Shown here one piece after another: positions 9,055 through 36,896 of a stretch of DNA of 46,584 nucleotides (the stretch's first letter is position 1; the number at the start of each line of letters is the position of its first letter). A program made the position numbers and the translations under genes. Below the pieces are notes generated by a model that was given only the letters and a program-made list of their open reading frames with translations, made no database searches and had not been told where the DNA came from. This stretch comes from Hyphochytrium catenoides (taxonomy: Eukaryota > Protista > Hyphochytriomycota), in contig FLMG01000245.1 in NCBI GenBank assembly GCA_900088475.1, positions 1-46,584 of the forward strand, read 5' to 3'.

Positions 9055-9735
9055 TTAGGCTGAGTCAGCTAGTGCCTCACTATCTATCATCTCTTGGATA
9101 TACTCCTCAAAGTGGCCCTTAAATCTCTCACGTAGGTCCTTAAGCTTCCAATCGTCCTTAGTGACGGCCTTCCTGCAGAGTTTTGAACCACAGCGACACT
9201 CTGGGAAGGCATCATAGTATGTTTCGCTCGTGCCATAGTCATAAGTAATCTCTTCATCCGGCTGAATGTCCCTACGAGCTGTCATGGTATAATTCTTTGA
9301 GAACCAAGTACTCGGGTCACAGCTGTGATTCTGAAACCGCGCCGCATCCTTGCCTGCGTCTTCTAATCTTATGCAGCCCGACATTTCGTTAGATGATACT
9401 TGATAGGCGAAGTGCAGGAAGATGTCGCGCTTTTCTTCTGGCCACGTTTGGATATCAGAGATTTTGTGAACCTCGTCCAAACTGGTCTCCCTGCTGTCTC
9501 TCCACACGACCTCTCCTTTTCTAATCAGCTTTGTTGCAAAGAGACCATAGCCCTCAATGGGGCTGCACCGGAGTTCAACGTACTTGTGAAGGCATCGTAA
9601 AGGGCCATCGCCGCCTCGTATCATATCTGGAATAGTCGTCGGCGACTGCTTGTTAATGGTCTTGCTTAGCAACGCCGGAATCACTTCAGCGAATGCATCT
9701 ATAGTCGCTGGTGCTCTGCGTTCAACAGCGTTCAT
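9055..9735 (-). CDS. SET + post-SET domain protein (putative lysine methyltransferase), intronless
   Basis: Motifs SPIEGYGLFA, RFQNHSCDPS, EEITYDY and post-SET CRCGSKLCR. Confidence 0.9.
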   Translation of the reverse strand: MNAVERRAPATIDAFAEVIPALLSKTINKQSPTTIPDMIRGGDGPLRCLHKYVELRCSPIEGYGLFATKLIRKGEVVWRDSRETSLDEVHKISDIQTWPEEKRDIFLHFAYQVSSNEMSGCIRLEDAGKDAARFQNHSCDPSTWFSKNYTMTARRDIQPDEEITYDYGTSETYYDAFPECRCGSKLCRKAVTKDDWKLKDLRERFKGHFEEYIQEMIDSEALADSA

Positions 9736-15930: not shown

Positions 15931-16171
15931 GCGAGAGATGGAGACTTCAGAGCCGCAACAGGCACCAGACATCAAGAGCTCGAAGCTTCCAGCAGAGATA
16001 GATCCCAAGCCCTTCAACCTTCGATAGTCGACAGAGCCTGAGGAGACGAGGAGTAGTTTTGACACGGGTCGTGCCTGGGTCAAAATCAGATCACTGCAGG
16101 CACTTGAGTCCAAATAGATAGGGCTCTACGGTGAGCACGCACGCAGGTCCACTCCGCCTTTGGAAGCTAGC

Positions 16172-18913
16172 ATGTCGCGGTTAGTGGATAGCAGTGAGGA
16201 GGAGAGTGAGGAGGAGCGCATGGCCTTCACAGAGCAAAATGATTTTGAGGATGGGCAGTGGATAGATGGTGAATTCTACGCCCGCAATCAGAAGCGAGGG
16301 CGGCATATGTCAAAGAGGGAAGCTATCTACGGCGTGTTCGCAGACCTGAGCAGTGAGGAAGATGAAGGAGCAAGCAGAAGAAAAGGTAGAAAAAGGGGGA
16401 AGCCAGGGGGCTTGGGGATGGCGGCTGCCAAGCCTCTTTCCTTCATACGTGGGGGTGTCCAGCGATCAGCAGAAGAAGAAATGACGGCGGTACCTCCTGA
16501 GCCCACCCAAGAGCCAGAGAAAGCCAACGAACAGGAAGAGTCTGAAGGGAAAGTAGGAGGTACTAACGTGGAGGAAGATGAAAGCAGGGCTGAGTTTCAG
16601 CGCCTGATGAAGGAAGGCACTGGTGGCGGATTTGCTGCTAAGGGGAAATCTAATCAGGATTTCAAGAGCTTTTTACAAATGAACGATGATGGGTCATCCG
16701 CAACAGACAGAAGTGCAGACAGGAGAACGGAGGCAAAGCAACCTCCGCCCGCTCGTCCTGTCCCAGAGCATGTTAAGCGGAATATGGGTTCGTGGCAGAA
16801 GCACACCAAGGGCTTCGGCATGAAGATGCTCGAGAAGTTTGGCTTCAAAGGGAGGCTAGGAAAAGACGAGGCAGGAATAGCCCAGCCAGTGGAAGTTAAG
16901 GTCCGGCCGAGCACCATGGGGCTTGGTTATGGAGGATTTAAAGAGGCCACTGAGCTCAAGGCTAACCGCGAATTAGAGCGGGAGGTGCGAGGGACAGTGG
17001 ATGAAGAGGAGGATAAGAGGCAGAAGGAACAGGAAGCCAAGAAGAAGGCGGAGGAAGATAGGCGCTGGAAGAAGTCAGCGTTACCAAAGAAGCCCAAGAG
17101 AGTTTATAAAACAGCAGCAGAGCTGGTCAATGACTCCGCTACTGCTGCTCCTAAGCCCTACATACTGGACATGAGAGGACCTCAAACCAAGATGATTGAC
17201 ACTCCGGGCCTCGGAACAGTAGAAGAGTTATCACAGGAAGGCATAGAGAGTGAGCAGGGCCTTGGACAAGAACTGGTCCATAATGTCCGTCTTATCGTAG
17301 ATCTGACCGAGGTCCAGATCTTCACACTGGACAGGAAAATACAAGGCCTCAAGCAGGATCTATCCAACCTTCGCTTGCAACAACAGGGACTTCAACAGAA
17401 GGTAGAGATGGAAAGAGGAGGAGGAGAAAACGTGCATCAAGTTCTTCAAATTATCTCGAAAGTTAGAGCCAAGATGACCAGCAGTCCTGATGAGGTCTCG
17501 CCTGGTGCTGTCATTGACCTCATTAAGCGGCTGAAGGCCCACTATCCTGCGGAATACCGGAGTTTCCACCTCATAGACCTCATGCCGGAAATAGCCCATC
17601 CAGTTATGAGGAACTCCATGAAGGCGTGGAAGCCTCTTGAAGAAGTTCAATCCATGGCTCAACTTCTTTTGAGGTGGGAAGCGGTGCTAACGGACGGAAT
17701 AGACGAAGAGAGGGCGAGAGAGGACCTGGACTTCGAAGGTGTGGAGGCATTTCAGAGCTTAATGCGAGACATAGTCCTTCCCAAAGTCCGCTCTGCCATA
17801 CAGAACGATTGGAATGTGAAGCAGCCGGAGGTCTGCGTCAGCCTTCTTAAGGCTCTTCAATCCTTCTTCTCCCCGACAGAAGGAGAAAAGGAAGATTCTG
17901 GACCATTCCAGACGCTGCTAGTACGAGTGATCTACCCTAAGCTAGCGGTGGAGGTAGAACGCTGGGATCCGAGGACAGACCCGGTTCACATACATACCTG
18001 GATCCACCCCTGGATCCCATTATTGAAAAAGAACCTGGAGCCTCTTTACCCTAATATTCGCTTTACCCTCTCCTCAGTCTTGAAGGAGTGGCATCCAAGC
18101 GATAGCAGCGCTCACACTGTCGTCTCTCCCTGGAAGGACGTATGGGATCCTCAGAGTATGGAGACGTTCCTTGTACGAAGCGTTATCCCGAAGCTTGTCA
18201 TACTTTTACGGGAGTTTGTCGTCGACCCAACCGACGAGAACCATGACCCCCTTCGCTGGGTCCTTCAATGGTCAGATGTTCTACCGTCAATCCATATGGT
18301 GAGTCTGCTTGAAGGTGAGTTCTTCCCTAAGTGGCTGCCAGTTCTTCACGCTTGGCTAGCAGATGAGCCAGACTATGCCGAAGTTTGGGCCTGGTATGCC
18401 AGCTGGAAAGCCGTTTTTCCCTCTGGTCTTGCCGCACATGAGAAGATTAAGTTGCAATTCAACAAAGCTCTGAAGATGATGAATGACGCAGTTAGCGGCG
18501 CCCTTGATCGGTCCAATCCTCCCACCGCTACTTCCTCTATTAGCTACTCGTACGTGCTGGAAAAGTATCAGCGCGAGGTGGCGGTGATGAGAGAGCAGGC
18601 GAAAGCAGAAGCGAAGGCTCGCCTTGAAACCGAAGCACAAGCGGTTCCACCAAGGACCGTGAGACACCCTGTTCGTCAGGATGTTTCTTTCAAGGAGGTT
18701 GTAGAGAAGTTTGCGGAAGAACACAACGTGACTTTCGTCCCCAACACCAAAAAGCAGGGTCTTCATCTGTGGAATAAGGCACTTTACCTCTTCGGACCGA
18801 TTAATGTTTATATCGACCAGGACGTAATCTTCGCAGAGGATGAGAAGGACAAGAAGCGCTTCTCCGCTATTTCGTTAGACCATTTACTTGCCCGGGCACA
18901 GACAAAGAGATGA
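16172..18913 (+). CDS. TFIP11: Tuftelin-interacting protein 11 / Spp382(Ntr1) spliceosome disassembly factor, intronless
   Basis: TIP_N motif (DFEDGQWIDGEFY...EAIYGVFAD), G-patch (WQKHTKGFGMKMLEKFGFKGRLGKDEAGI...GLGY), GCFC region (WDPRTDPVHIHTWIHPWIP, LLEGEFFPKW) and C-terminal SFKEVVEKFAEEH. First true ATG is at 16172. Confidence 0.96.
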   Translation: MSRLVDSSEEESEEERMAFTEQNDFEDGQWIDGEFYARNQKRGRHMSKREAIYGVFADLSSEEDEGASRRKGRKRGKPGGLGMAAAKPLSFIRGGVQRSAEEEMTAVPPEPTQEPEKANEQEESEGKVGGTNVEEDESRAEFQRLMKEGTGGGFAAKGKSNQDFKSFLQMNDDGSSATDRSADRRTEAKQPPPARPVPEHVKRNMGSWQKHTKGFGMKMLEKFGFKGRLGKDEAGIAQPVEVKVRPSTMGLGYGGFKEATELKANRELEREVRGTVDEEEDKRQKEQEAKKKAEEDRRWKKSALPKKPKRVYKTAAELVNDSATAAPKPYILDMRGPQTKMIDTPGLGTVEELSQEGIESEQGLGQELVHNVRLIVDLTEVQIFTLDRKIQGLKQDLSNLRLQQQGLQQKVEMERGGGENVHQVLQIISKVRAKMTSSPDEVSPGAVIDLIKRLKAHYPAEYRSFHLIDLMPEIAHPVMRNSMKAWKPLEEVQSMAQLLLRWEAVLTDGIDEERAREDLDFEGVEAFQSLMRDIVLPKVRSAIQNDWNVKQPEVCVSLLKALQSFFSPTEGEKEDSGPFQTLLVRVIYPKLAVEVERWDPRTDPVHIHTWIHPWIPLLKKNLEPLYPNIRFTLSSVLKEWHPSDSSAHTVVSPWKDVWDPQSMETFLVRSVIPKLVILLREFVVDPTDENHDPLRWVLQWSDVLPSIHMVSLLEGEFFPKWLPVLHAWLADEPDYAEVWAWYASWKAVFPSGLAAHEKIKLQFNKALKMMNDAVSGALDRSNPPTATSSISYSYVLEKYQREVAVMREQAKAEAKARLETEAQAVPPRTVRHPVRQDVSFKEVVEKFAEEHNVTFVPNTKKQGLHLWNKALYLFGPINVYIDQDVIFAEDEKDKKRFSAISLDHLLARAQTKR

Positions 18914-19405: not shown

Positions 19406-22400
19406 TTATAAGAAGAGGCGGTCCATGGCTTCGGCATTCTCGCCACGGAGCTTCCTCCACTCTTTTCTCGCCGCATCCTCCAGATTCCTCTGAGTAATAC
19501 GCCTTTCTGATCCGTCCTTCGGCTTCTTGATGGCAGCCGCGGCTGCCGCTCTGAATATTGCATTGCTGATAGAAGCAGCCGAGAGCTCATACTTGTTGCC
19601 CAGTTCTCTGTAATCCAGCGATTCCACTGGTGCCGTCGCTATGCAACAAGGAGGGGAGAAGAGATGGACCAAAGATAGGTGGGCTTAGAAGATATTGAAG
19701 GGGAGAGCTAATTGAGGACACTATGAGTCCAAGTGAAGCAAAAAACATGGTCCACACTCTCAACGCTCAAGTACGTGGCAATCGGGTTATAAATTGCCAA
19801 ATCTTCGCTTACCAGGGATCATTGCCTTCCACAAACTAGCTCTGAGGTCCGCGCCAGGCATCTTGAACTGGATTGAGAACTGCACAGCACGGGCAAGGTC
19901 GGGATGGATTTGAGCATTCTCCGTAATGCCAGCAACAAGAATGACGATTCCTGCGACGACAGGATTAGAGTTAGGTCCAGGCCTTGTTCCCAAAAGAGGA
20001 GTTATACGACTTTCCGGTATAGACTCTGCCATCTGTGACCAAATTTATCTCACTCGCCCGTGAAAATCGTACTTTCCCACATAGCCATTATCTCTACAGA
20101 CTATCAGGCTTGTGCGTGCAGACCCCACTTTTCCTTTACCTGGAAAGGATGCTAATCTGTCCAGCAGATGCATTAGAAGCATGTTATTCCTCGCGGGTTC
20201 ATATTCTGTCGTGGTGGCAAAGGTCTCTAAACCTTCCAGTACTAGGACGGCATCCATCAATCTTGCATCGTCAAAGACCGCGCGCACTGCTTTGTTCGTC
20301 TGAGCGTCTGAGTCCAGCATAAGCTGGCTGAAATTCACCACCTTCAGTGGCTTCCCCACTTCAAAGCCGACACATTTGGCTGCTGACGATTTGCCAATGC
20401 CGGGAGGGCCATAAAAGACAGCTAGGCAAAAAGCAGGCACCGTCACTTATACAGGAAAGCAAGGTCAAGCATGTGGGACAAGAGCAACTCAGGAAGACTA
20501 AAGCGCCGGGACGAGAGGAGAGCTTTGATGTATGGCCAATTCAAAGTCTTTTTACCTGTGGTGCCCTTCTGTTGCTTTTCATCTCCAAAGGTGAAGCCCC
20601 ACTGACCGTACACTACCCCTCGCGCTTTCTCAAACTGGATCAACTCCAACAACTTTTGCTTAGTTTCCTTCGACAGCACCAGCGAGTCTAAACCCGCCTT
20701 CGGAACGACTCGATGGTCAAACGTTTTCATTTGGAGACTACCTCGCATTTGCATACTAAACAAGTTGAGCACAATGTTAATAAGGGACTTGGGGCTTAAG
20801 GGACGGAAGAAAATTGCCAAGAACATACAATGGGGACTAATCGGAAAGATGAGGCTGTGTGCAAAGGCTTACCTGCAACCGGCAACGATATCTGCTTCGG
20901 TCACCAGAGGGTTTTTGGGATCTCGCCCTATTGCCTTTAAAAGAGCGGCGACGACTGCGTTCTTTATGAATCCTCCACTGAGCTCATACTTCAGGCTCAC
21001 CGCATCCCAATCAATGTCGTCAGAGAGAGGAATCTTCTCCGACGTTAAGACCTATGAATAAAACATGTTAGTAACGCGGGAGCAATGATTGATGGTGTAC
21101 CAGGCAGAGACAACATGATGAAGTGTAGTTAGAAGTAGAAGGCCCGATTCCCGAAGAGTATAGAGAGCGTGATAGAGACTTGAACATATGAGGCGAGGGC
21201 TGGACGAGAGATAAATCGCGGCCACAGTCCCAGTACAACGTCTGCAGAGCGTCGGCTAATCAACAGAGCAAGAAGGAGCAGCAAACCTTCCAAATCTCTT
21301 TTCTCTGGATGTGATCTGGCGGTCTGAACTCGAACACAGAGTTTATCCGACGGTGCATTGCCTCGTCCAAGTCGTAGGGCCGATTCGTCGCTAAAAAGAC
21401 AATGCCCTGAAGGCAGAACAGTTAGTCAGTCATGATCTGGTCTACACGCAATCATCTGATTGACATTAGACCATCTCACTTCTTCCAGCTTCTGCCATTG
21501 GCGGTATCGTTCACATACCTCGTGTCGCTCCATTTCTGTGAGAAGAGCGTTCAAGAGCCTGTCTCCTCCAAATTCTCTTTGCTTGAAGATAGCTTCACAT
21601 TCATCAAAAAATAGAAGTGCGTTGCTCATATCTGCTTCCCGAAACAACCCGCGAAGATCTGCATCTGTGTCCATTCCTTCCTTCTTCTTGCCCTGAGAGG
21701 TAACTTCTTAGACCTGTCGTAACCCTACTCCTCTTTGTGATTACTCCTCTGCTCGCACACTCTGAACCTGTCTCCACCGCTCTGCAGCTACACATGTTGG
21801 TCACGCTTTGCCTCACCTGTAAACTAGGGAAATCAACCATGAGCACTCGTTTTCCTATATGATTTGCTACGGCGTTAACTGTCATCGTTTTTCCGGTTCC
21901 ACTGGCTCCACAGAGGAGAATAACAAGCCCAGAGCCATAGCTGATGACCTGAGCAGGGGTCAAAGAAACCGAAGTCAGATGGACAAGCTTGCCACAAAAA
22001 GGCGACCTTTTAAGTAAACGCATGCGGAAGTTGTTGCCAGCCTTTAGTAAGTAAACTGGCCATGAGCAAATCCATGCACCAATTAGCTCCTCACCTCTTC
22101 CAGCTTGTTCTTCTTCCGATATTCCCGAAACTTTTCAAAATTGGAGACTGATTCTAGAAGCATCTCCTTCTGTTCCGCCGGCAGGACGACCTGATCGATC
22201 GTGACCTTAACGCAGAGATGGTAGTGCAAGTGAGTACATAAGTAGCACGCTGGTTGAGCGCAACGATAAAGAGAAACTAGCGAGTGAAGTGATGCTTGCT
22301 ATATACGGGGCCAAGGGGCAACAATATAGGCTGGCGTCTCCCTTCACCTTCGGCTGGTACAGGTCGGACCCTTCGACCAGTTCGTTGATCTCTGTGTCTA

Positions 22401-25400
22401 GCCCAACAACCCAATCCAGTATCCGCCGGTCAAGCTCCACCCGCTGGTCAACAAGGTCTCCTGAGTCGCTGTGCCATCGGCCTCTATGGATCTTGACGAG
22501 TCCTCGAGTCACCTTGCGTCAGGAAGAACAACGGCGGAAGCAGCGACAGGTAACGGTAAACACGTAGAGCGGATACGCCTGATTGTGCTGGTCTCTACAT
22601 GGCCCTATCCCTGGGTTATCAATCTCTTTCTATTCTGTGAACGTATTCCTCTTCCATAGCATTCTCTAGTAATATGCGATGAGCACTGTTAAAATGGCTC
22701 TATCGCGAAGCTCCGCACCCTATTTTCTGTCTCTTCTGTATCCCTCCTGATGCATATCGCCTTCGTATCCGCCTAATGCTCTATCACTGATTAAACGCAC
22801 CAGTTTGGCAGACTTGTAGAAGTAGACCCGATGCTCAATTTGAGCCTGGAAAGTATCGCAGAATACTGAGATCACCTGGTTGATGGTAATGCTCTCATCC
22901 ATTCTTTGCACGGGCGAGGTGTCTACTCCCTCCAACAGCACCTTCACCACTGGGGAGACGGTCTTCCCGATGAGGAGTACAATTACATTTTGTTCAAAAC
23001 TATTGAGTCCTAATTTCCGGCACATGATCTGCAGGAAAGAGCCAGTTAGCACGATTAACACGACATGGAAAACGATGATGCGAATTCCTTCAAACAGCGG
23101 CCTCAATCACACGGATTGAGACAGGCGCTGAACCAATGCTGGTGAAGCAGGCATAAAGAAAGTAAAGCAGGCCGCAAAGAGGCTGAAATACAGTTCGCAT
23201 CGGACACTAGTACCTCTAATCTGGGGAGAGCCAAGCCTTTGGCTTCGGTTTCCTTCAATCTCTTTTGAACCTTACTTTCCAGCACCTTCTGTTTGGCCTG
23301 GAGCTCTCTTCGGCCCGCTTGGGATCCGCCGGAGTTTGAGTCCCAGGGCTGCTTAGTTCCCTGTAAGAAATGCAGATGAGAATGGAGTATGTTTTGCTGT
23401 GCACTTGCTACCATTCTCTCGCTTTTCCGCTCCCCAAATAAATTGACAGTCGTATATGCCAATTGGGACTTACGTCCTTACTCTGGAGTGTTAAGGAGTT
23501 GATCCGCTATAATCCACCACCCCTTTTTCCCTTATTTCTATTTGGGCCGAGCTCAGTTCCTCCATTGATTGTTCTGTAACACTTACCGCCTCCTTCATCT
23601 GGTCCTTCATCCGCGCACCGGACGCTCTGATCGTGAAGGCCAACACTTGGAAGCGGTCCTCCAGGTAGTCCAGTTGGTTATCGTTCGAGTATGGACCTAA
23701 ACTATCATCCACCCCAGTTGCCGTTGGATGGTCAGATGTGTTCAGCACCTCTCCACCGCTGGTATCATCAGTGTTTTGACCATGCCCGAGGTTTGAAGCG
23801 GTCTACAATGAGGTTGTGGCAAGTGAACGGTCAGTCTATACAGTCCCGAGATGCTGATCGCAAGAGAAAAACAGCAACCATACAAAGCCATAAAATAAAG
23901 GAAGAACGAAAGGGCAAATGACAATATGTGGAGCCACATGCGATGCCTGAGTAGTAAGACCAATTGAGACATTCAGAGGTAAAGAGACGAGAAAAGACAT
24001 CGCGACCCTCATGCGCCTTACTTTTCTCTTCCTCCTGTGCATATTTATTATGGACTTGACTGTCGTCCCCTCCTCGTCATAATCTTGTTCACTGCTGCTG
24101 GTAATCTTTCCTACTTCAGACGAGTCTTTCTCCAACCTTCCTCCAGTTTTCAAGGCGCTTGATTTAGAGCCCTTTTCTATCTCCTCTTTAGCTCCTTTTG
24201 AAGTACCAGCTCTTCCCGTCAGGTGTTTGGGTTCTATGAGTCCTTCCTCTCGCAAAAGGACCTCCATCTGAGTTTGACTGACTTTCAGCTTCTGGTTACT
24301 CGTTAAAGTGCGTCCTTTGAGATCAAAAAGCAGAGTGCCTTCAGTTACGGTGACATGGTGACCGAAAGAAAGGTATAGCAAGTCCCGGGGCGATAATCAG
24401 TCTAAGTTAAGGTAGGAGGGATGATAGCAAGGACTCAAGAGCAAAGAGAGGAGACAGAATGAAGGTAACTTTCCCCTAGCGTAGTCAGGCTTCTAGGATA
24501 GTTCAAGCTCTACCTACCAAGGAGAAATCTAACCGAAATGTTGGTTAGGCGAAGGGAGATGCCGTAGTGATCATCATCTGTCAACACCGTTCCCTAAAAA
24601 TGGACAGGTTAATGGTCTGAATAGAGAGTCAGATAAAGGTAATTAGAAGGAAAACACGAACCTCCTTGACGTGAAGCCGCTCATCGTCATAGAATTCCTC
24701 AACGTCTATTTCTGACATTCCCTGCGAAGCAGAGAGTCAGTATAGGCTCTCCGCCTGCGTCCCGCAGGGATATGGCCTTTAAATGGCATCTCCCTCATGT
24801 TCTCTTTTTCGCCTCTCCCAAGCCGTATCTGCCTCTCCTCCTTTTCCTCCCTCCCTCCACTTTAAGAGCTTACCAACCGGTTAGCTCCTTCAATCCTCCA
24901 TATTTGAACTATATACGTACCACAAGCTTCTGACAAGTTACTGTGCGGCGGGATGGATCATCCTCTAGCAGCTGACTGCGAGCAGCATCACTTTGGGCTC
25001 CCTGAAGAACGACCAAAAAGTGAAGAAGCTCCGTCTCCTTCTCGGTCATTTTGTAGCGCTCCGCTAAGCGGAACACCCGGGGCTTTCTCTGCCAGCGGAC
25101 GGTCGTGGCCTCCAGTCTGCGCGTCCGGACTGTGATCAGATGCTTTACAAGGCCATCCTATTGAAAAAGCGGGAGCCAAAAGATACTAAGACGGCAGGTA
25201 TTGTCTCCTGAACATGAATAGCGAAGGAACAAACCAGAAGGCTGAAGCGATCTGCAAGCTCTTTTCGGTTAACTAGCCTCTCCTTGATGACTTTGGCCTT
25301 TCTCTCCTCCTGTTCTGAGCCCTGAGGAGCTTGGTCCACGACATCTGGCTTTACAGAGTGATTAGTGAGCTCTACTAATGCTCCTTGCCGCAGTGCGCGG

Positions 25401-25735
25401 GCCATAATGTACAGCTCATAAAACCAGAAATAGTTCGCCTCGCTCTCAAACGGCTTTGAAGGATCAACGTGTAGTTCCTGTGAGAACTCGGCTGCATCCA
25501 AGAAGTCGACAGTTAGTCGTGAGGTGAGCACGCACTCAACATATCCAAGCCTACCAAGAACTGTTAGAATGTACTGGTGTCCCTCTAGCTTCGCCAAGAT
25601 GTCGCTAACTCCTGCGTCTGACCGTTGGCCGTTCAATTCTTCTTGAGCTTCTCCAATTTTGATCAGTTTTCTGACCGAACCTTCAAAGTCTTGATCCTCA
25701 CTCCTGGCTCTCTTATCTCTTCCCGATGTCATCAT
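19406..25735 (-). CDS. Large multi-exon protein with winged-helix-like region and two tandem AAA+ ATPase modules (Afp15/Pvc15-like family)
   Basis: AAA1: LLCGASGTGKT, LLFFDECE, IVFLATNRPYDLDEAMHRRI. AAA2: VFYGPPGIGKS, VLVLEGLE, ELSAASISNAIFRAA. The N-terminal region contains LPRLE|IMCRKLGLNSFEQNVIVLLIG. Many GT-AG introns. The 5' exon linkage (24.4-25.7 kb) is less certain. Confidence 0.85.
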
Positions 25736-26470: not shown

Positions 26471-29400
26471 CAAACAACATTAGGCATCTGTGCATTCCGT
26501 TGTGGGGGATAATGCGGAGTCTGATGCTCGGCATACTGGATTGATGATGGGTCATCACGACCTTGTGGCCTTTCTCTAAGGCCATCTGGCAGGTCATAGT
26601 TGAGAGTGCAGCAGATGGTCATGGACTTAGTGGCGTGCTTTGCGATGAACAACGTTGAGAATATCAGCCTCCACAGGTTATAAACTCCCGAGATGCCAAT
26701 AATGATGTTTAGGTAGGTTGGGAACGGTACGTAGCTGCAGATGAGCACCACGTACAGAAGGTTGGATGCTACCCATTTGATCAACATTGATGTGCGAAAG
26801 CGCCCGAATTCTTTCTTGAGGTCGTCCTCCTCCTTGGCCAGAAGCTTCTTCCTCTCCTCCTCTGCCTTCGCCTTCGCTTTTATGTCCTCATAGCTTTGGC
26901 TTCCACTGTCCGCCACGCAAAGCACTTAGAAACTATCATGTGGTGGGACCAGAGCCTTAGAGCCAATCTTACCTGTCCTGGGGAGATGTTCCGTGGTTGG
27001 CACTATCCAGTCCTTTGGTACCCCAAGAGAGATCGTGGAGGTTGCAAAAGGAGTAAACAGAGAAAACGATAGACATCGTCGGGAGCAGGGCAAAGTACTA
27101 GATGATAGAGATAAGTGTCAGTACCACTAGAATAGCATCACGGTGTCTCTAGAGTTTTCTAGAAAGATACCATGCACCGAGACAACGAGGGCTGAAGGGC
27201 AGTTGAGCGGGTTAGAAGAAGTTGTAGCGATAACGCATCCCCTTTAACTGTTGGCTCAGACTGCTATCTGCTGTTGAAGATTATCTTACCTGTACGCATG
27301 AGAGAACTATATGATGGATTTCTCCGTGGATAGCACCAGCTATAAAAAACACGCCAATGACCAACAAAGCCACGATTATTGAGAAAAGGTCTAGTGTTCG
27401 GTATGAGGCCTGAATGAGTGCCACTAGGAAAGCCAGCATAGAGAAAATTGCAAAGAATATGGCAGATGCGAAGTAGTAGTCTGCGACATGTTGCCGCTTG
27501 TTTCCTAGTGCCACCACGAACTGCAGACCAATGAAGAGAGCCCAAAGGAGCTCATACACCCATTCGATCAAGTCGAGAACCCAGTCAGGAGCTCCAGAGG
27601 TGTCCATGAAACCCCATCTATTCGCTCGGATGCCGTCTATGAGGAGCGCATAGATAACCAGATAGAAGTTGGCCACCAGCGTCCAGCTGATAAAGACCTG
27701 AAGTAGCATCGAGCAGTACTGGAACATGAATCCCATCTGCCGCAGGCAAGAATGACGACTTTGATTTCGAATCCTGCCCCAGTTTTTGACAGTGTAGAGC
27801 AGCGCAAAGAAAGAGCCGTTCAACCAGCGCCGCCTCTGTCCCAGTAAGTCAACCAACGAGCGCGGGGTGTCCGTTCTTGCAATTGCGTTCTTGATGTACT
27901 GCAGCTTCCACTCACATTTCTCCCGAGCCACAATCTCGAAGCACAGAATGCGATCTTCCGCTAGGTACATGTTACCATTGAAGGGCCCCAGTTCCTTCTG
28001 AGGGGTAGAGAGTTGTTTGAAGTAAGCCTCTAGTGGAGGACCTTGGATAGCGCTGTACCGATAAGCCGAAAACGCTCCTGGAAGAACACTAATGTACCCG
28101 AAGACGCTTTCCGTGGCCTGTGTTGTTAAGTATGCACGCACAGATAGTCCGTTAAGGCCCAGATAACGCTTAGAGAGTGAGCAGGAAGTAACAATAAATG
28201 CACGGCAATATATCTGAGTGCGGTAGAGTTGATAGTGGACCGAAGGAGCGGAGATGGGATGACAGGCGGGAGGAAGAACAGGGCCATAGAGAACTAACAG
28301 GAATTACCTTGTCAAGTATGTTGGATACTTTATATTCAAAGTGCTGCGCTGCCACAACCCAATTGCAAAGAAGAGGCAATGGGGTGTCGACAGCAATCTC
28401 ACCACAACAACCGCCAATATTATCATCCACCTCCATTGCTGCCAGCAGCTTGTAGATGGCGGACTTGGTTGGAAGGGTTCCGACGTCAAGCAGGATGGTA
28501 AACTCCGGACTAACTTGTTCTGCAAAAGCATCAAAGAACCATTGATGGCTGTTGAGCTTGCCGGCGTTATGCTCCTTGAGTGCAAATACGATTTGCATTG
28601 GTGGATGGGGACTGTCCCCATCCTTTCGCAACAACTGAACCTTGCCTCCACTTCTGACAAGGCGGTGTTTGATCAGTGTTGGAGAGTACTGAAACATGTG
28701 CAGTTGCACATCCAGGCCAGAAGAGGTGATAAGCATAACATCCTCGTCAAAAAGACCTGCAGAAGACATTATCAATCGGGATTGACATGTGGCACTAGGA
28801 TGTAAGGTCACACACAGCAGTCGAAGACATCTTGGGGCTCTCTTCCACTGAAGTAAAAAGGTTACAAGGTGCGACAGACTAAATTAACGCACTCAAAATT
28901 TACAAGGTGCGACAGACTAAATTAACGCACTCACCAATGTTGCGAAGGAAGGAAAGCGTCCCTGGGTTAGCCTGTACTCTCCCGTCCGAAACTATGACCA
29001 CTAAAATCTGCTGCCAGGCTCTGTCACCTTCAAATCCTGGAAGTTTTTTGTTCCGGATGAAGTGAATATTATTCGCGACTTTGCGAAGCGTCATCTCGAG
29101 CTCCTTCTCATCTTCATTATACATGGTGATCACGACCATCAGCTTGGGGCGGCGGCCATACTGAAGACAGCGCAATGCGTAGCCATCACTTATGAAGTCC
29201 TTCGGACTAAGCAGATATGCTTCACAATTAGGTAACTGTATAAGGGGTGAGGAAGGAGGACGGGGTACTAACCGTTGCGTGGTGACTGCCGTATATGTCA
29301 TGCAAGTGAACTCTTCAGACGCAGATGGCGCTACTGGGGAACAGAGATCGGGCCCTAGATGATCTGCGACAAATGCAGCTACCGTCCTGCCCTTCTTCGG

Positions 29401-30023
29401 TGGACATGGCCCCAACATCCCGTTCTCGTACCAGTCTGCCAGTTGATCGCACCAATCCAGGATCTCCAGAGCCTTGGGTTCCAACTGGTCACGAATTGTA
29501 AGGTTCGGCTCGTTTCCCTCGATACGCATCAGCATCTCGCCAGCGGAAAGATAGCTGAGATACACAAAGATTTAGTCTTTAAGTCGCCAACTTTGGCAAC
29601 AAACTAGGTTACCTCTTCATGGCTCCCTTGTAGTGTCCTCCTTTTTCCGCCTCCACTCCGATCTTAACTAGCCGGAATACCTCGTCGAGAGAGTCTGGGG
29701 CAGTTACTTGGGCCATAGTCCGCGTGCTCGAGGGACCTCGTCGTGAAGGTCCGCTGACGGGTTGTGTTGGACGCGCAGTCTGACCTCCATGACGGTTCTG
29801 GGAAGTGCAAGTGTTAGCTGAAGGAGCCAGACGAAGTCTCCCATAAGGAAGCAGGGGCGCGGCTTCCAAGAAAAAAAAGTTATACCTGAGGGTGGGTTGA
29901 AAGCTCATTGTAATGTTGCGGCTGCCAGTGAGGCTCGGGTTGACCAATAGGTCCACTAGGAGCACTGGGCCATGGGCCATGTCCATGACTACCATATGCA
30001 CCATTTCCTCGCCCAGGCTCCAT
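26470..30023 (-). CDS. CHS: Chitin synthase (GT2, oomycete/division-1-like) with N-terminal MIT-like domain, multi-exon
   Basis: Motifs [82 protein letters not shown] and SWGTKG, plus C-terminal TM helices. Inferred start MEPGRGNG at 30023 splices in phase to the exon starting at 29797. Confidence 0.95.
28862..28933. repeat. 34-bp tandem duplication at the 5' end of a chitin synthase intron
   Basis: ttacaaggtgcgacagactaaattaacgcactca occurs twice (28862-28895 and 28900-28933). Confidence 0.92.
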
Positions 30024-30288: not shown

Positions 30289-31071
30289 ATGCTCAGTCTC
30301 CCATCACAATGCCAGTGTCCGCATCTCCGTACCATCCTCTTACTTGTGCCTGTGATCTCTACTCTTGAACAGCTGCGTCTCTCCTCCGCCGCCGCATGCC
30401 TGTCTTGTTCTTCTTCTTCCTTTCCTTTGGCCGTCGAGTCATGGTCTCCGTCTTTTTCGTCTCTTTTCGAAGAGTTGCCTTGTGTATCAAGCGTACAACG
30501 GATGTTCAGCAGCATTGTGGTGTACGACGACGCACACTACTTATTCTGCAACTGGAAGAGGGAACTAAACCTCAAGTCCTACGCCCGTCTTGAAGAGTCA
30601 GAACTTGCGGTTTGTATGGCGGTATGGACTGCGGACTTGAATATGTGGGTCAGTGAGTCAACGACAGACATTCCTAATATAGTGTATGGATTACCAATGT
30701 GTGTGGCCAACTTTCTGGAATCAAAGCAGATGTGCTTTACTGTACAAACTTGACAGTACTTGTACAAGTTCTACGCAGTTCAGCTTGCTTCCTTACGCCC
30801 GCTGTGTACCGCAACAATCCATCAAACCATCTTCATGATCTGTGAGCTGTCAGGTCTGCCACTTACCCCACCATAATCACGACGTTTGAGCTTCTTAGAG
30901 GCATTGGGAGGTGGCAATCTCTGTTCACATAGGTTTATTGTCAGTCTGGCAGTGTCAGTGCGCTTCCATCTGGCAATAGATAACAAAGAGGGTCGGCGTG
31001 GTGTTCTTGGCCTTATTGGTGGTCGGGCGTCGGGTTGGGAAGAAGTGCGAAGCGATGTGCTGCGACGATGA
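30289..31071 (+). pseudogene. Long single-frame ORF remnant with two internal stops, between the chitin synthase and DHHC starts
   Basis: ORFs 30289-30753 and 30886-31071 share one frame. Across 261 codons the only internal stops are TGA 30751 and TAA 30874. Confidence 0.35.
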
Positions 31072-32117
31072 GGAGTGCTGCTGCGATTTGTGCAAATGCT
31101 GTGCTCCCCTTTTTCGAGTCTGCCCAAATGGCAGCGGAGTCGTTCCTCTCGTTCTGGTCATAGCACTAATTGTTTGGATATACTCTGTTTTTACTATTTA
31201 TGCCTTGTTCCCTATGGCAACGGGAACGTCTCAACTCTACTCAGATGCTGCCATCTTTAACCTATGTGTGGGATTGCTTTGGATCTCTCTCTTACGGTGC
31301 CTCACCGAGCAAAGAATATTCATCAAGCCTGCAAAGGATAGAAAGGAAATGTCTGAAATACCACTTGCTCCCGAGAAGGTAAAAGAGACCAAATGGAACG
31401 GAGATAGACGTTTCTGCCGTAAGTGCAACCAGTACAAGCCCGATCGTGCTCATCATTGCTCAGTATGCAACATGTGTGTCTTGAAGATGGATCATCACTG
31501 CAATTTTATCAACAAGTAAGTCTATACTCTTCACCGTGGTTCCTCACAGTGTACTTAGAAGACGCTTGTCCGCCTACCCTATGTAGATGCATTGGCTTCT
31601 GGAACTATAAGTTCTTTATCCTCTTCCTCTTCTGGGCAGTGGTTAGCTGCGGATATGTTTCAGTCTTTCTGTACAACCATAGCTTCCATGCGGCAATCAC
31701 ACGTATGCTGCTGGACTGGCACGGATTCACGGACCCTGCTTCTCAGATCTGCATGGTCTTTCTGGTGGCTGCTGTCCTCACCTTTGTGCTCGGGGGCTTT
31801 CTTGTTATGCACCTCTACCTCATTGCTCGTAATTATACGACCATAGAACATTGTGAGAAGCGAACTTCGGGAGATTATATTCACATCTGGAGCCTCGGAT
31901 TCTTAGCCAACATGGCGGAGGTGGGTGCATGCTATGAAGTTGGTGCTTCACGTGCTGGGGCCATTTACCACGGTACTTACCATTTAGCATGACCCTACCC
32001 TCACAGGTATTTGGAGGTCTAGGAGAGTGGTATATTTGGTTACTGCCAGTCCTTCCACGAGAAGCCAAGCAGACAAAGGGTAACTATTTTCGTGTGCTTG
32101 ATGCTAAACGGGATTAG
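31055..32117 (+). CDS. DHHC-type protein S-acyltransferase (palmitoyltransferase), 3 exons
   Basis: [35 protein letters not shown]|[20 protein letters not shown] motif, NMAE|VFG...WLLP and four hydrophobic segments. Confidence 0.95.
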
Positions 32118-35689: not shown

Positions 35690-36896
35690 ATGGGAAGGAA
35701 GAAGCGTGACAGAGGGAAGAAGCGGCAGTCTCGGAAGACAGGTATAGTCGCTACGCTCTGCCTACGCCAACAAGGGTTCATTGACAGTTTTGTCCGCAGG
35801 TGCCTTCGACTCAGCAAGTATGGCTGCCGGTGAAGAGCTATTCTCTGAGCTTATGATGCCTGAGGCTCAAGGTTGCGAAGACGCGGAGTCGCTCGCCGCT
35901 CAGCAGAAGCTTATTATCGCCATGCGGAATAACTCCATGGATGAGCTCCTGTCTCTTGCTGCGGAGTTCCACTTTGAAGAGATGTCTGTTCGGGACATTG
36001 GCGATGAAGTGGAACCTGCAAGCTCCGTGGCGCTACCTAGAACAAGAAAACTGATTTACGATGACTTAGATCCTGAGCTGGCTAGGGATTTGGTGGCCGA
36101 TGTCATGCGAGCGATGCATCAATGGCAAACTCGTAAGGCATTAGAGGATAAACAGGATAGTGAAGAGGATGTGGAAGACTTCAATCGGCTCAAGACTGGC
36201 TTCCATCGCCTATCTCTGTTGCTTTTGGCTAAAACCCCGAAGGATGGGGTGGATATGAAAGACTACTTGGGCTGGTCGCTATTGATGCAGGCTGTAAACT
36301 GCGACCTGTTAGACATGGTGAGGGACCTTCTCCAGCTTGGCGCAAACCCCAATATAGTCGATCAGAGCGGCAGAACAGCACTAACAATGGCCGTCGAGCT
36401 CTGTCGCCCGAACATAGTGCAAACTCTTCTAACGAGCAGTCCACAAAAGCTTACCACCATTGAGACAAGGATCAAGTCAAGGGCATCGGCGACTACACTT
36501 CAGAATGAGCAAAACAGTGAAGACGGTGAGGGATGTACGCCACTCATGATCGCCTGTCTACAAGGTTACGTGGATATCGCACGTATGCTTATTGAAGTAG
36601 GTCAAGCTGATATCGGCTCCCACCAAGACGGTACTGGAGATTCTTGTCTGCACTTAGCAGCTATGCATGGACATCTGGAGGTTGTCAAGCTACTGGTGAA
36701 TGCTGGGCTAGACGTGAATGTCAAAAATGACTGCGAACAGACGGCGATCTTCGGCTGCAGCAGTTTAGCTATTGTGCAATACCTTGTGCAAGCAGGTCTC
36801 GATGTGGCCGCAACTGATGTGGATGGCGAGACAGCACTGTCAATCGCATTAGCATTAGGAGACAGTGATGTCGCCTGTTATCTACAAATTTGCTAA
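35690..36896 (+). CDS. Ankyrin-repeat protein with basic N-terminal exon
   Basis: Ankyrin motifs GWSLLMQAV, GRTALTMAV, GCTPLMIAC, GDSCLHLAAMHGHLEVVKLLVNAG and GETALSIA. Exon 1 MGRKKRDRGKKRQSRKT splices in phase through a short GT-AG intron ending at 35799. Confidence 0.88.

What the first reader, a model, noticed from the sequence alone, without database searches (positions are those of the whole stretch)
19406..25735. Intron-rich eukaryotic double-AAA ATPase resembling bacterial contractile-injection-system ATPases (Afp15/Pvc15)
Seen in sequence: an N-terminal PYSNDNQLDYLEDRF segment, a winged-helix-like LPRLE.MCRKLGLNSFEQNVIVLLIG motif, 'IDQVVLP' and 'LDSLVLS...QWGF' pre-AAA segments, and two AAA modules. 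From recalled family knowledge: this combination typifies the AAA ATPases encoded in extracellular contractile injection system loci (Afp15/Pvc15, implicated in cargo loading) rather than Cdc48, NSF or Pex1. Inference: a domesticated, fully intronised eukaryotic member serving an uncharacterised substrate-remodelling system. No tail or sheath genes are present in this window. This is the best candidate here for an undescribed system.
Basis: partly seen in the sequence, partly recalled or inferred. Interest (0 to 1): 0.72.

Follow-up and report, generated by a model that had tools for sequence, protein, structure and literature searches.

The report
Eukaryotic cousin of injection-system AAA ATPases
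This is a real, 18-exon gene for a widely conserved but unstudied eukaryotic double-ring ATPase that shares its whole layout with the cargo-loading ATPases of bacterial contractile injection systems, yet descends from a different bacterial branch and has no injection machinery beside it.

Summary
A minus-strand gene spans 25735-19406, with about 18 GT-AG exons. It encodes a winged-helix domain (Pfam PF22977) split over four exons, followed by two AAA modules.

PF22977 is also the N-domain of ATPases in extracellular contractile injection system (eCIS) loci, both an Afp15-like gene in Serratia and a Nostoc gene. A Phytophthora orthologue aligns end to end with the Nostoc ATPase. Cdc48-type proteins score far lower.

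The gene is not a domesticated eCIS ATPase:
- The eukaryotic proteins form one clade covering oomycetes, ochrophytes, dinoflagellates, Rhizaria, Amoebozoa and non-flowering streptophytes.
- That clade is nested in a grade of rare prokaryote-type relatives. In these both rings are canonical, and none seen lies beside eCIS genes (most contigs are short).
- The active ring is swapped. Eukaryotes keep D1 and have lost the catalytic motifs of D2, whereas eCIS ATPases are the reverse.
- Eukaryotes and their two closest prokaryote-type relatives carry a second, duplicated winged-helix module.
- No sheath, tube, baseplate, Pvc16 or eCIS_core homologue was found in the 61-Mb genome, probably Hyphochytrium catenoides.

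Function is untested, and every database name for the family is generic. This is a new variant of a known kind, of moderate interest.

The parts
19406..25735 (-). Whole coding span of the gene (ATG 25735, stop 19408-19406), about 18 exons
   Evidence: ORF pieces. Ordered tblastn of orthologues P0001, P0003 and P0011. GT-AG junction search.
25235..25735 (-). Exon 1. Holds the start codon, the N-terminal basic motif (MMTSGRDKRARSED) and the first long helices of the N-terminal extension. The donor at 25235 (GTTTGT) is the best of several candidates.
   Evidence: tblastn P0001 43-152. Junction candidates. KRxR-type motif shared with oomycete and pelagophyte orthologues.
24921..25157 (-). Exon 2. 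Core of the duplicated winged-helix module WHD' (PRVFRLAERYKMTEKETELLHFLVVLQG). The donor is at 24924 or 24921.
   Evidence: tblastn 57% identity to P0001 168-232. hhalign of the N-extension against WHD gives 87.8% probability, E 3.3e-06.
24662..24721 (-). Exon 3 (GMSEIDVEEFYDDERLHVKE), part of WHD'
   Evidence: tblastn P0003 233-251. GT-AG junctions.
24518..24593 (-). Exon 4 (GTVLTDDDHYGISLRLTNISVRFLL), the beta-hairpin part of WHD'
   Evidence: tblastn P0003 252-280. Unique junction 24518|24338.
24061..24338 (-). Exon 5. Holds the end of WHD' and the start of a low-complexity linker. The donor is unresolved (24115 and 24061 are candidates).
   Evidence: tblastn. 49 frame-keeping candidates. 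The corresponding stretch of the orthologue is disordered in the model.
23521..23802 (-). Exon 6. Holds the end of the linker and the first helix of WHD (PYSNDNQLDYLEDRF), PF22977 positions 6-55. The acceptor is unresolved (23802, 23758, 23750 or 23748).
   Evidence: Pfam. tblastn. Junctions.
23214..23360 (-). Exon 7. WHD, PF22977 positions 55-103, ending in LPRLE.
   Evidence: Pfam. Junctions 23521|23360 and 23214|23028.
22801..23028 (-). Exon 8. WHD core (IMCRKLGLNSFEQNVIVLLIGKTVSP...FYKSAKL), PF22977 positions 98-175.
   Evidence: Pfam 67.9 bits. 64.1 bits in the genome search. 68% identity to Phytophthora.
22348..22512 (-). Exon 9. End of WHD (LDRRILDWVVGLDTEINELVEGSDLYQPK), PF22977 positions 175-221.
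   Evidence: Pfam 44 bits. Junctions.
22095..22205 (-). Exon 10. Pre-D1 segment with IDQVVLP.
   Evidence: tblastn. Junctions 22348|22205 and 22095|21948.
21817..21948 (-). Exon 11. D1 Walker A (LLCGASGTGKTMTV).
   Evidence: Pfam PF00004. Motif table.
21519..21692 (-). Exon 12. D1 Walker B (LLFFDECEAIF). The pore-loop-1 position has no aromatic-hydrophobic-Gly motif.
   Evidence: Pfam. Motif table.
21287..21406 (-). Exon 13. D1 sensor 1 and arginine fingers (FLATNRPYDLDEAMHRRI).
   Evidence: Motif table. Unique junctions.
20873..21051 (-). Exon 14. D1 lid (KYELSGGFIKNAVVAALL).
   Evidence: Weak AAA_lid_3 match. tblastn.
20556..20755 (-). Exon 15. D1-D2 linker with LDSLVLS and the family-wide QWGF motif.
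   Evidence: Motif table. W and G are invariant across eukaryote and prokaryote members.
20140..20421 (-). Exon 16. D2 with Walker A kept (GPPGIGKS), Walker B lost (VLVLEGLE) and pore loop lost. The acceptor is at 20421 or 20445.
   Evidence: Pfam PF00004 40.7 bits. Motif table.
19813..19950 (-). Exon 17. Rest of D2, with the sensor-1 asparagine lost (VILVAGITEN) and one arginine left at the finger position.
   Evidence: Junctions 20140|19950 and 19813|19638. Motif table.
19406..19638 (-). Exon 18. D2 lid and C-terminus, ending with the stop codon.
   Evidence: tblastn P0003 to residue 1203. ORF table.

Best explanation
The locus encodes the Hyphochytrium-type orthologue of an old, vertically inherited eukaryotic AAA+ family. 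Its layout is a basic N-terminus, WHD' (a diverged copy of the winged-helix module), a disordered linker, WHD (PF22977), AAA-D1, a WGF linker and AAA-D2.

Shown here:
- The family is homologous over its whole length to the prokaryotic WHD-AAA-AAA ATPases, which include the eCIS ATPases Afp15 and Pvc15.
- Its closest prokaryote-type relatives are a separate, rare subfamily in which both rings are canonical.
- D1 in eukaryotes keeps Walker A, Walker B, sensor 1 and both arginine fingers.
- D2 in eukaryotes keeps only the P-loop.

Inferred:
- The protein forms a two-tier hexamer in which D1 hydrolyses ATP.
- D2 is a nucleotide-binding assembly ring.
- The tandem winged-helix modules select the client, which could be protein or nucleic acid.
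- Neither ring has a canonical aromatic pore loop 1, so it more likely remodels or releases a bound partner than threads it processively.
- The conserved KRxR at the N-terminus of stramenopile members suggests nuclear import.

It is a single gene with no injection apparatus.
For: - Domain calls: exon by exon and on full-length orthologues.
- Orthologues: 47-68% identical over conserved exons. They occur in all sampled oomycetes, pelagophytes, a chrysophyte, dinoflagellates, Mataza, Flabellula, Acanthamoeba, conifers, liverworts, mosses, lycophytes and streptophyte algae.
- Homology to eCIS ATPases: colinear alignment with the Nostoc ATPase. PF22977 is present in Afp15-like and Nostoc ATPases that sit inside annotated eCIS loci. 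55 of 80 prokaryote loci have sheath, tube or baseplate genes within 10 kb.
- Trees: the eukaryotes are one group (99-100 SH-aLRT), with stramenopiles and streptophytes each monophyletic. They are nested in a grade of prokaryote-type proteins, and the eCIS clade is separate.
- Module tree: eukaryotic D1 groups with D1 and D2 with D2. P0319 and L104 are sister to the eukaryotes in the full-length and D2 trees; in D1 the three-way split between them, the Amoebozoa-type pair and the other eukaryotes is unresolved.
- Motifs.
- Duplicated WHD': sub-threshold Pfam match, confident helical and winged model for residues 33-305, and hhalign E 3.3e-06. The same extension is present in L104 and P0319.
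- Similarity ladder for P0001: 829 bits to Marchantia, 510 to P0319, 277-354 to the short both-rings-canonical relatives, 84-200 to eCIS ATPases, 65 to a Cdc48-like protein.
- Single copy of PF22977 in the genome.
Against: - No expression or splice evidence for this locus. Two junctions in the linker are unresolved.
- Hexamer formation, ATPase activity, client and localisation are all inferred from motifs. The KRxR motif is absent or unseen in several lineages.
- The trees are 'quick' searches with long branches, and the root rests on paralogue rooting with 83-95 support.
- Eukaryote monophyly is weak in the D1 module tree (66). The two closest prokaryote-type relatives lie on short contigs (4.3 and 5.7 kb) whose bacterial origin is not proven.
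- Full-length analyses used orthologue P0001 as a proxy, because the spliced model of the window gene was not joined.
Confidence: 0.72

Rival explanations
1. This is a domesticated eCIS ATPase. The gene was captured from an Afp/PVC-like locus and still works as a cargo-loading chaperone for an unknown eukaryotic delivery structure.
For: It shares PF22977, double-AAA architecture and the WGF linker with ATPases inside eCIS loci. In prokaryotes this architecture is mostly eCIS-linked.
Against: The eCIS ATPases form a separate clade (100 SH-aLRT). The eukaryotes branch with relatives that are not seen in eCIS contexts and have both rings canonical. The catalytic ring and pore loop that Pvc15 uses (D2) are the ones lost here. 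No sheath, tube, Baseplate_J, Pvc16_N or eCIS_core homologue was found in the genome. Three of those five searches had no positive control, so they are weak.
Confidence: 0.05
2. The family is a eukaryotic conflict or immunity ATPase inherited from a bacterial defence-island system. The prokaryote-type relatives act with partners such as a ClpP protease, and the eukaryotic protein kept a surveillance or remodelling role.
For: The prokaryote-type relatives sit beside defence-island-type genes:
- PDDEXK_4, NYN and double-PIN genes next to P0344.
- A WCX-domain gene downstream of P0341 and a sigma-54 activator upstream of it.
- ClpP directly upstream of the ATPase in L128 and L147, plus a WYL-WCX regulator in L128.
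The nearest curated family for every member is the anti-phage ATPase IetA.
Against: The contexts are few and lie on short contigs. IetA scores are far under the cut-off (about 120 against 510). No defence phenotype is known. The eukaryotic gene is single-copy and slowly evolving across oomycetes (85-91% identity within Phytophthora), unlike typical immune genes.
Confidence: 0.15
3. It is a divergent member of a classical eukaryotic type II AAA clade (Cdc48/p97, NVL/Rix7, Afg2, Pex1/6 or NSF).
For: Some records name orthologues 'cell division control protein 48', 'cdc48' or 'FtsH'. The best solved-structure matches are Cdc48 and p97 rings.
Against: Those matches are about 65-80 bits and cover AAA cores only. 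No CDC48_N or other classical N-domain is found, and PF22977 is present instead. The protein aligns full-length with prokaryotic WHD-AAA-AAA proteins at 277-510 bits.
Confidence: 0.03
4. It is a bacterial contaminant, a recent transfer or a pseudogene in the assembly.
For: Relatives are abundant in bacteria.
Against: The gene has seventeen GT-AG introns. All exons are open and their motifs are conserved. The neighbours are eukaryotic (chitin synthase, DHHC, G-patch). Orthologues occur in every sampled oomycete and follow the species relationships.
Confidence: 0.01

Closest known systems
eCIS ATPases Afp15 / Pvc15 (and Cis15-type ATPases of lineage II loci, such as the Nostoc pn3 locus)
   Same: Both have an N-terminal PF22977 winged-helix variant, two tandem classical-clade AAA modules, a conserved WGF linker before D2 and pre-ring 'hhLP' segments. 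They align end to end.
   Different: - In eCIS ATPases D1 is degenerate and D2 is catalytic, with a KYIGETEKNL pore loop. Here D1 is catalytic and D2 has lost Walker B, sensor 1 and the pore loop.
- Eukaryotes add a second winged-helix module and a disordered linker, about 400 residues in all.
- There is no eCIS locus.
- The eCIS ATPases form a separate clade.
Prokaryote-type WHD-AAA-AAA ATPases outside eCIS loci (P0341, P0342, P0344, L103; and, with the N-extension, P0319 from a Planctomycetota-labelled MAG and metagenome contig L104)
   Same: These are the closest relatives by score (277-510 bits) and by tree. D1 motifs match, including FDECE in P0319. P0319 and L104 share the WHD' extension.
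   Different: Both rings are canonical, with an SK[FYW]VG pore loop in D2. The genes are intronless and lie beside bacterial genes. No function is known for them either.
IetA (IteA), ATPase of the IetAS anti-phage system
   Same: It is the best-scoring curated family for D1 of the eukaryotic proteins and for D2 of the eCIS ATPases (NCBIfam NF042959 and PADLOC IetA).
   Different: It has a single AAA module. Scores are about 120-180 bits against a 510-bit cut-off. It has no PF22977 domain.
Cdc48/p97, Afg2, NVL/Rix7 (classical eukaryotic type II AAA)
   Same: They have two stacked AAA rings of the classical clade. They are the best solved-structure matches for the AAA core.
   Different: The N-domain is different (no CDC48_N). 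Similarity is much lower (about 65-80 bits). They have canonical pore loops.

Membership tests
eCIS ATPase (Afp15/Pvc15 type) | N-terminal winged-helix variant domain (PF22977) | tested here: met
   PF22977 positions 6-221 lie on four exons of the window. The same family is found in the Afp15-like and Nostoc eCIS ATPases.
eCIS ATPase (Afp15/Pvc15 type) | Two tandem AAA modules, colinear with the family | tested here: met
   P0001 456-1154 aligns with Nostoc 59-711. In the module tree D1 groups with D1 and D2 with D2.
eCIS ATPase (Afp15/Pvc15 type) | D1 degenerate; D2 catalytic with the KYIGETEKNL pore loop and FFDEAD Walker B | tested here: not met
   The window has D1 GASGTGKT / FFDECE / ATNRP..HRRI, and D2 VLVLEGLE with no pore loop. 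The Pvc15 description is in PMC11495950.
eCIS ATPase (Afp15/Pvc15 type) | Encoded in a locus with sheath, tube, baseplate and Pvc16/DUF4255 genes | tested here: not met
   PF04984, PF06841, PF14065, PF04865 and PF13699 gave no match in the 61-Mb assembly. Controls rang only for PF04984 and PF04865. The neighbours in the window are ordinary eukaryotic genes.
eCIS ATPase (Afp15/Pvc15 type) | Placement inside the clade of eCIS-locus ATPases | tested here: not met
   The eCIS-type rows form their own side of a branch with SH-aLRT 100.
WHD-AAA-AAA superfamily (PF22977 + two PF00004 modules + WGF linker) | Full architecture and linker motif | tested here: met
Eukaryotic orthogroup (PITG_11625 / SPRG_04948 / H310_07306 / Cryptomeria XP_057858145 type) | WHD' extension, WHD, catalytic D1, D2 with P-loop only; ordered similarity over the whole length | tested here: met
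   tblastn of P0001 and P0003 covers 25612-19412 in order. Exon motifs are identical in state to the orthologues. Each exon scores highest against eukaryotic members. This was tested exon by exon, because the joined protein was not built.
Cdc48/p97-type AAA | CDC48_N double-psi barrel N-domain; score over the TIGR01243 cut-off | tested here: not met
   No PF02359 or PF02933 in the exons or orthologues. TIGR01243 scores 65 bits against a cut-off of 803.
IetA anti-phage ATPase | Score over the NF042959 cut-off; single AAA module; IetS protease partner | tested here: not met
   123 bits against 510. The protein has two modules and a PF22977 domain.

The most novel reading that the evidence does not exclude
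The family is an ancient bacterial conflict-system ATPase. Its prokaryote-type relatives sit beside ClpP, WYL-WCX regulators and nucleases. It entered eukaryotes before the split of Amoebozoa, SAR and streptophytes, and it survives as an unrecognised immune or surveillance remodeller. That would make it a sister line to the ATPase that contractile injection systems recruited for cargo loading.
Probability: 0.15. Interest if true: 0.7.

Novelty: new variant of a known kind. Interest (0 to 1): 0.45.

Why it matters
Afp15 and Pvc15-type ATPases are studied as the loading motors of programmable protein-injection devices. This work shows that the same architecture exists as a conserved single-copy gene in oomycete pathogens, dinoflagellate symbionts, amoebae and non-flowering plants.

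Three forms of the ATPase occur:
- both rings canonical in rare prokaryote-type proteins;
- D1 degenerate in eCIS ATPases;
- D2 degenerate in eukaryotes.

This gives a natural experiment on which ring does what and on what the winged-helix domain recognises. It also corrects misleading database names ('Cdc48', 'FtsH', 'SpoVK/Vps4') for an orthogroup with no assigned function. The gene offers a tractable target in Phytophthora, Marchantia or Acanthamoeba.

Tried and rejected
- tblastn of the WHD exon against plasmids found nothing.
- The protein-atlas look-up of the same exon gave no usable hit.
- A PDB sequence search with the exon gave only a chance match.
- A paper search for PF22977 found nothing. 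A search combining contractile injection, AAA, eukaryotic homolog and winged helix found nothing relevant. A search on gene identifiers was swamped by the unrelated term 'protein sav'.
- No RNA run was listed for the locus.
- The mixed eukaryote and prokaryote alignment was too diverse for the search for related loci.
- The genomes behind L091 and L096 are not held, so the prokaryote-type relatives could not be surveyed by phylum.
- Foldseek of the N-terminal model against the PDB gave only weak MarR/PadR-type winged-helix rows, with E about 1.
- Rejected readings: contamination, pseudogene, Cdc48/Pex-type gene, and recent transfer.
- The spliced protein of the window was deliberately not joined or searched. 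Every search of the window gene was done exon by exon by reference. Full-length steps (structure, trees, pairwise alignment) used database orthologues as proxies.
Full report
**What is in the sequence**

The region 25735-19406 holds a chain of open pieces on the minus strand.

Pfam assigns four consecutive pieces to successive parts of one model, PF22977 ('Winged helix domain, variant'):
- 23494-23748 matches positions 6-55.
- 23106-23462 matches positions 55-103.
- 22723-23106 matches positions 98-175, at 67.9 bits.
- 22210-22512 matches positions 175-221.

Pfam assigns PF00004 (AAA) to the pieces that carry GASGTGKT, FFDECE and GPPGIGKS.

tblastn of three full-length relatives found later (P0001, P0003, P0011) covers the locus in order from 25612 to 19412. 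A search for frame-keeping GT-AG introns gives a solution at every junction. At most junctions there is a single solution, and its junction peptide matches the orthologues. One example is LPRLE|IMCRKLGL against LPRLEELAAKFKL.

The model has 18 exons. Only the two junctions that flank a low-complexity linker (exons 5 and 6) stay ambiguous. No RNA run was listed for the locus, so splicing rests on homology.

The window gene was searched exon by exon by reference. Database orthologues served as proxies for the full-length steps.

**Whose genome**

- The assembly has 61.0 Mb in 4759 records, and PF22977 occurs once in it.
- Neighbouring genes are eukaryotic: chitin synthase, a DHHC palmitoyltransferase, a G-patch protein and LRR proteins.
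- The best protein matches are oomycete proteins, at 60-68% identity rather than near-identity.

I infer that the window comes from that species or a very close one. This is an inference from statistics, not an identification.

**The eukaryotic family**

A scan of 1.84 billion representatives with the WHD exon found only 81 proteins at E <= 0.001. Many are 1000-1200 residues long with the domain at position 300-500.

Named members come from these groups:
- oomycetes: Phytophthora, Peronospora, Plasmopara, Hyaloperonospora, Pythium, Globisporangium, Lagenidium, Albugo, Achlya, Aphanomyces, Saprolegnia;
- other stramenopiles: Pelagophyceae and Chlorochromonas;
- dinoflagellates: Cladocopium, Durusdinium, Symbiodinium;
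- Rhizaria: Mataza;
- Amoebozoa: Flabellula and Acanthamoeba;
- streptophytes: Cryptomeria, Taxus, Marchantia, Riccia, Calypogeia, Sphagnum, Diphasiastrum, Selaginella, Mesotaenium, Spirogloea.

No animal, fungal or angiosperm member appeared in these lists. The lists are capped, so this is 'not seen', not 'absent'.

All names are generic or wrong: 'AAA+ ATPase domain-containing protein', 'hypothetical', 'cdc48', 'FtsH', 'SpoVK/Ycf46/Vps4'. Every full-length member shows the same layout of about 300-400 unassigned N-terminal residues, PF22977 and two AAA modules.

**Link to injection-system ATPases**

tblastn of the WHD+D1 part of P0001 against plasmids hit two genes that lie in annotated eCIS loci:
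- An 'AAA family ATPase' in Serratia proteamaculans plasmids. It lies between the tape-measure gene and a DUF4255 gene, downstream of sheath, tube, VgrG and gp25 genes. That is the position of Afp15.
- An 'ATP-binding protein' on a Nostoc plasmid. It lies at the end of a full locus with DUF4255, two sheath genes, tube genes, LysM, VgrG, gp25, baseplate genes and a DUF4157 giant protein.

Both carry PF22977, at 62 and 211 bits. P0001 aligns with the Nostoc protein in a single colinear BLAST alignment. It covers residues 456-1154 against 59-711, with 25% identity and 185 bits, and runs through WHD, D1, the WGF linker, D2 and the C-terminal lid.

In 80 bacterial and archaeal loci fetched with a profile of such ATPases, 55 have sheath, tube, baseplate or DUF4255 homologues within 10 kb. 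Among the 52 loci of at least 18 kb, 42 do.

Classical clades are much further away:
- TIGR01243 (CDC48) scores 65 bits, and the best PDB chains (Cdc48/p97) about 70-80 bits on the AAA core only.
- The best curated family for the active ring of both the eukaryotic and the eCIS proteins is the anti-phage ATPase IetA. It scores about 120-180 bits, far below its 510-bit cut-off.

**The gene is not an eCIS ATPase**

1. *Tree with eCIS-type rows.* In a tree of 17 eukaryotic and 61 prokaryotic WHD-to-C-terminus sequences, the eukaryotes form one group (SH-aLRT 100) on a long stem. The internal order broadly follows taxonomy.

2. *Closer prokaryote-type relatives.* A search from the conifer protein uncovered closer relatives:
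   - proteins of 729-740 residues with the WHD at the N-terminus (P0341, P0342, P0344);
   - P0319, an 888-residue partial protein from a MAG labelled Planctomycetota;
   - metagenome contigs L103, L104, L128 and L147.

   In trees with these rows the eCIS ATPases are one side of a branch (SH-aLRT 100). On the other side the eukaryotic clade (99) is nested in a grade of the new relatives. L104 and P0319 are its successive sisters, at 99 and 95.

3. *Module tree, in which each ring roots the other.*
   - All D2 modules group together (99), which confirms that D1 corresponds to D1 and D2 to D2.
   - Eukaryotic D2 groups with the D2 of L104 and P0319 (95). In D1 the three form one group (99), but the order within it is unresolved.
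   - In the D2 half the eCIS clade itself arises from within the grade whose rings are both canonical, with support of 83-89.

4. *Motif states* (Pvc15 data in PMC11495950).

   | Group | D1 | D2 |
   |---|---|---|
   | eCIS ATPases | Walker A decayed; Walker B, sensor 1 and arginine fingers lost | Canonical: GPPGTGKTM, KYIGETEKNL, FFDEAD, ATN, RR |
   | Most new prokaryote-type relatives | Canonical | Canonical |
   | L128 and L147 | Canonical | Degenerate |
   | Eukaryotes, including this window | Canonical: GASGTGKT, FFDECE, ATNRP, HRRI | P-loop kept; Walker B (VLVLEGLE), sensor 1 and pore loop lost |

5. *Similarity ladder.* phmmer bits of P0001 are 829 to Marchantia, 510 to P0319, 439 to L104, 277-354 to the short both-rings-canonical relatives, 84-200 to eCIS ATPases and 65 to a Cdc48-like protein. 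The individual window exons give the same order.

6. *No eCIS parts in the genome.* The genome gave no match to Phage_sheath_1, Phage_T4_gp19, Pvc16_N, Baseplate_J or eCIS_core. For three of these families the control genomes did not ring either, so those three blanks are weak.

**The N-terminal extension**

- Pfam gives a sub-threshold second PF22977 match in the first 230 residues of some orthologues: 25.4 bits in P0001, 15 and 11.5 in two others.
- An AlphaFold2 model of P0001 1-640 (27-row alignment, mean pLDDT 72) shows two confident modules, residues 33-305 and 415-625. Both have the same order of elements: long helical hairpin, helical bundle, beta-hairpin, helices. A disordered stretch at 310-412 joins them.
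- Profile-profile comparison of the two modules gives 87.8% probability and E 3.3e-06 over 118 columns.
- Foldseek against the PDB found only weak MarR/PadR/ArsR-type winged-helix regulators. No solved structure of this domain seems to exist.
- A profile of the eukaryotic extension also matches L104 (residues 43-257, E 2.5e-10) and the truncated start of P0319. The duplication therefore predates the eukaryotic clade.

In the window this module is encoded by exons 1-5.

**How it probably works**

Shown:
- The architecture and the motif states.
- Single copy in this genome.
- Conservation: 85-91% identity among Phytophthora and downy mildews, and 38-49% between eukaryotic supergroups.

Inferred from general knowledge of type II AAA+ proteins:
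- The protein forms a two-tier hexamer.
- D1 is the motor.
- D2 is an ATP-binding but non-hydrolysing assembly ring, by analogy with NSF D2 or p97 D1. The P-loop is conserved while the catalytic glutamate, sensor and pore loop are gone.
- The tandem winged-helix modules are the client or adaptor binding part. In Pvc15 the N domain is required for payload loading.
- Neither ring has the aromatic pore-loop-1 motif that the prokaryotic D2 rings keep. I therefore expect remodelling or release of a bound partner rather than processive unfolding.
- A basic K-R-x-R cluster within the first 10-30 residues is shared by the window, most oomycetes, P0003, a pelagophyte transcript and P0079. It suggests nuclear import, but this is weak, untested and not universal.

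**Contexts of the prokaryote-type relatives**

These contexts are few and short.
- P0344 lies among PDDEXK_4, NYN and HTH_upst_double_PIN genes and a 2070-residue AAA_16 protein.
- P0341 lies between a sigma-54 activator and a WCX-domain gene.
- L128 and L147 have a ClpP gene directly upstream. L128 also has a divergent HTH-WYL-WCX regulator.

These hint at conflict or defence islands and, for one branch, at a protease partner. I treat this as the basis of the 'novel case', not as a finding.

**Novelty and verdict**

- The gene is an orthologue of many deposited, uncharacterised proteins. Pfam's precomputed annotation already marks them with PF22977. The bare membership is therefore implicit in databases.
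- I found no paper describing the eukaryotic family or its relation to Afp15 and Pvc15. This holds within the limits of the held library.
- New in this analysis are the three-state pattern of ring decay, the duplicated winged-helix module, the nesting of eukaryotes in a lineage not seen beside eCIS genes, and the wide but patchy eukaryotic distribution.
- I rate it a new variant of a known kind with moderate interest. The function is open and the eCIS 'domestication' reading is not supported.

Noticed in passing
L128:1896-4833 and L147:570-3360 (metagenome contigs): In both contigs a ClpP protease gene (PF00574, E 4e-30 and 3e-36) lies directly upstream of a WHD-AAA-AAA ATPase whose D1 is canonical and D2 degenerate. 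L128 also has a divergent HTH-WYL-WCX regulator. This may be an unnamed ATPase-protease pair of a defence-island type. No PADLOC model fits beyond weak IetA matches.
   Followed up: partly
L091:1-2668 (P0319, MAG labelled Planctomycetota) and L104:2047-5178: These are intronless ORFs on prokaryote-like contigs. They are the closest relatives of the eukaryotic family and already carry its duplicated winged-helix extension, but both AAA rings are canonical. Whether these contigs are truly bacterial is unverified.
   Followed up: partly
L009:8947-11421 (P0144): A PF22977 ATPase of the D1-degenerate type lies in a bacterial contig with no eCIS structural gene within about 9 kb. Its neighbours are XdhC, a PBP and a 1240-residue unknown protein. 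Ten of the 52 long prokaryote loci likewise lacked eCIS hits nearby.
   Followed up: no
window 27281-29565 (-): Several ORF pieces of a chitin synthase-like gene, split by introns. This fits a chitin-walled stramenopile.
   Followed up: no
window 16160-18913 (+): An intronless 917-residue ORF that looks like a G-patch / tuftelin-interacting protein 11 (Spp382-type) splicing factor. It lies next to the 18-exon ATPase gene, a sharp local contrast in intron density.
   Followed up: no
window 467-1876 (+): An ORF with a long (TPAP)n Pro/Thr repeat followed by a glycoside-hydrolase-like domain, probably a secreted or wall glucanase.
   Followed up: no
window 9055-9735 (-), 3576-5555 (+), 30998-31992 (+), 35781-36896 (+), 44780-46150 (-): By eye, these are a SET-domain-like ORF, a TPR plus J-domain (DNAJC7-like) gene in pieces, a DHHC palmitoyltransferase in two pieces, an ankyrin-repeat ORF and a ribonuclease-inhibitor-type LRR ORF. 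All are ordinary eukaryotic genes, and none was tested.
   Followed up: no
P0337, P0316 (Acanthamoeba castellanii and an unnamed EukProt transcriptome protein): The Acanthamoeba member and one unnamed EukProt member carry SAM domains (PF00536, PF07647) in front of the winged-helix modules. This is a lineage-specific N-terminal addition.
   Followed up: no
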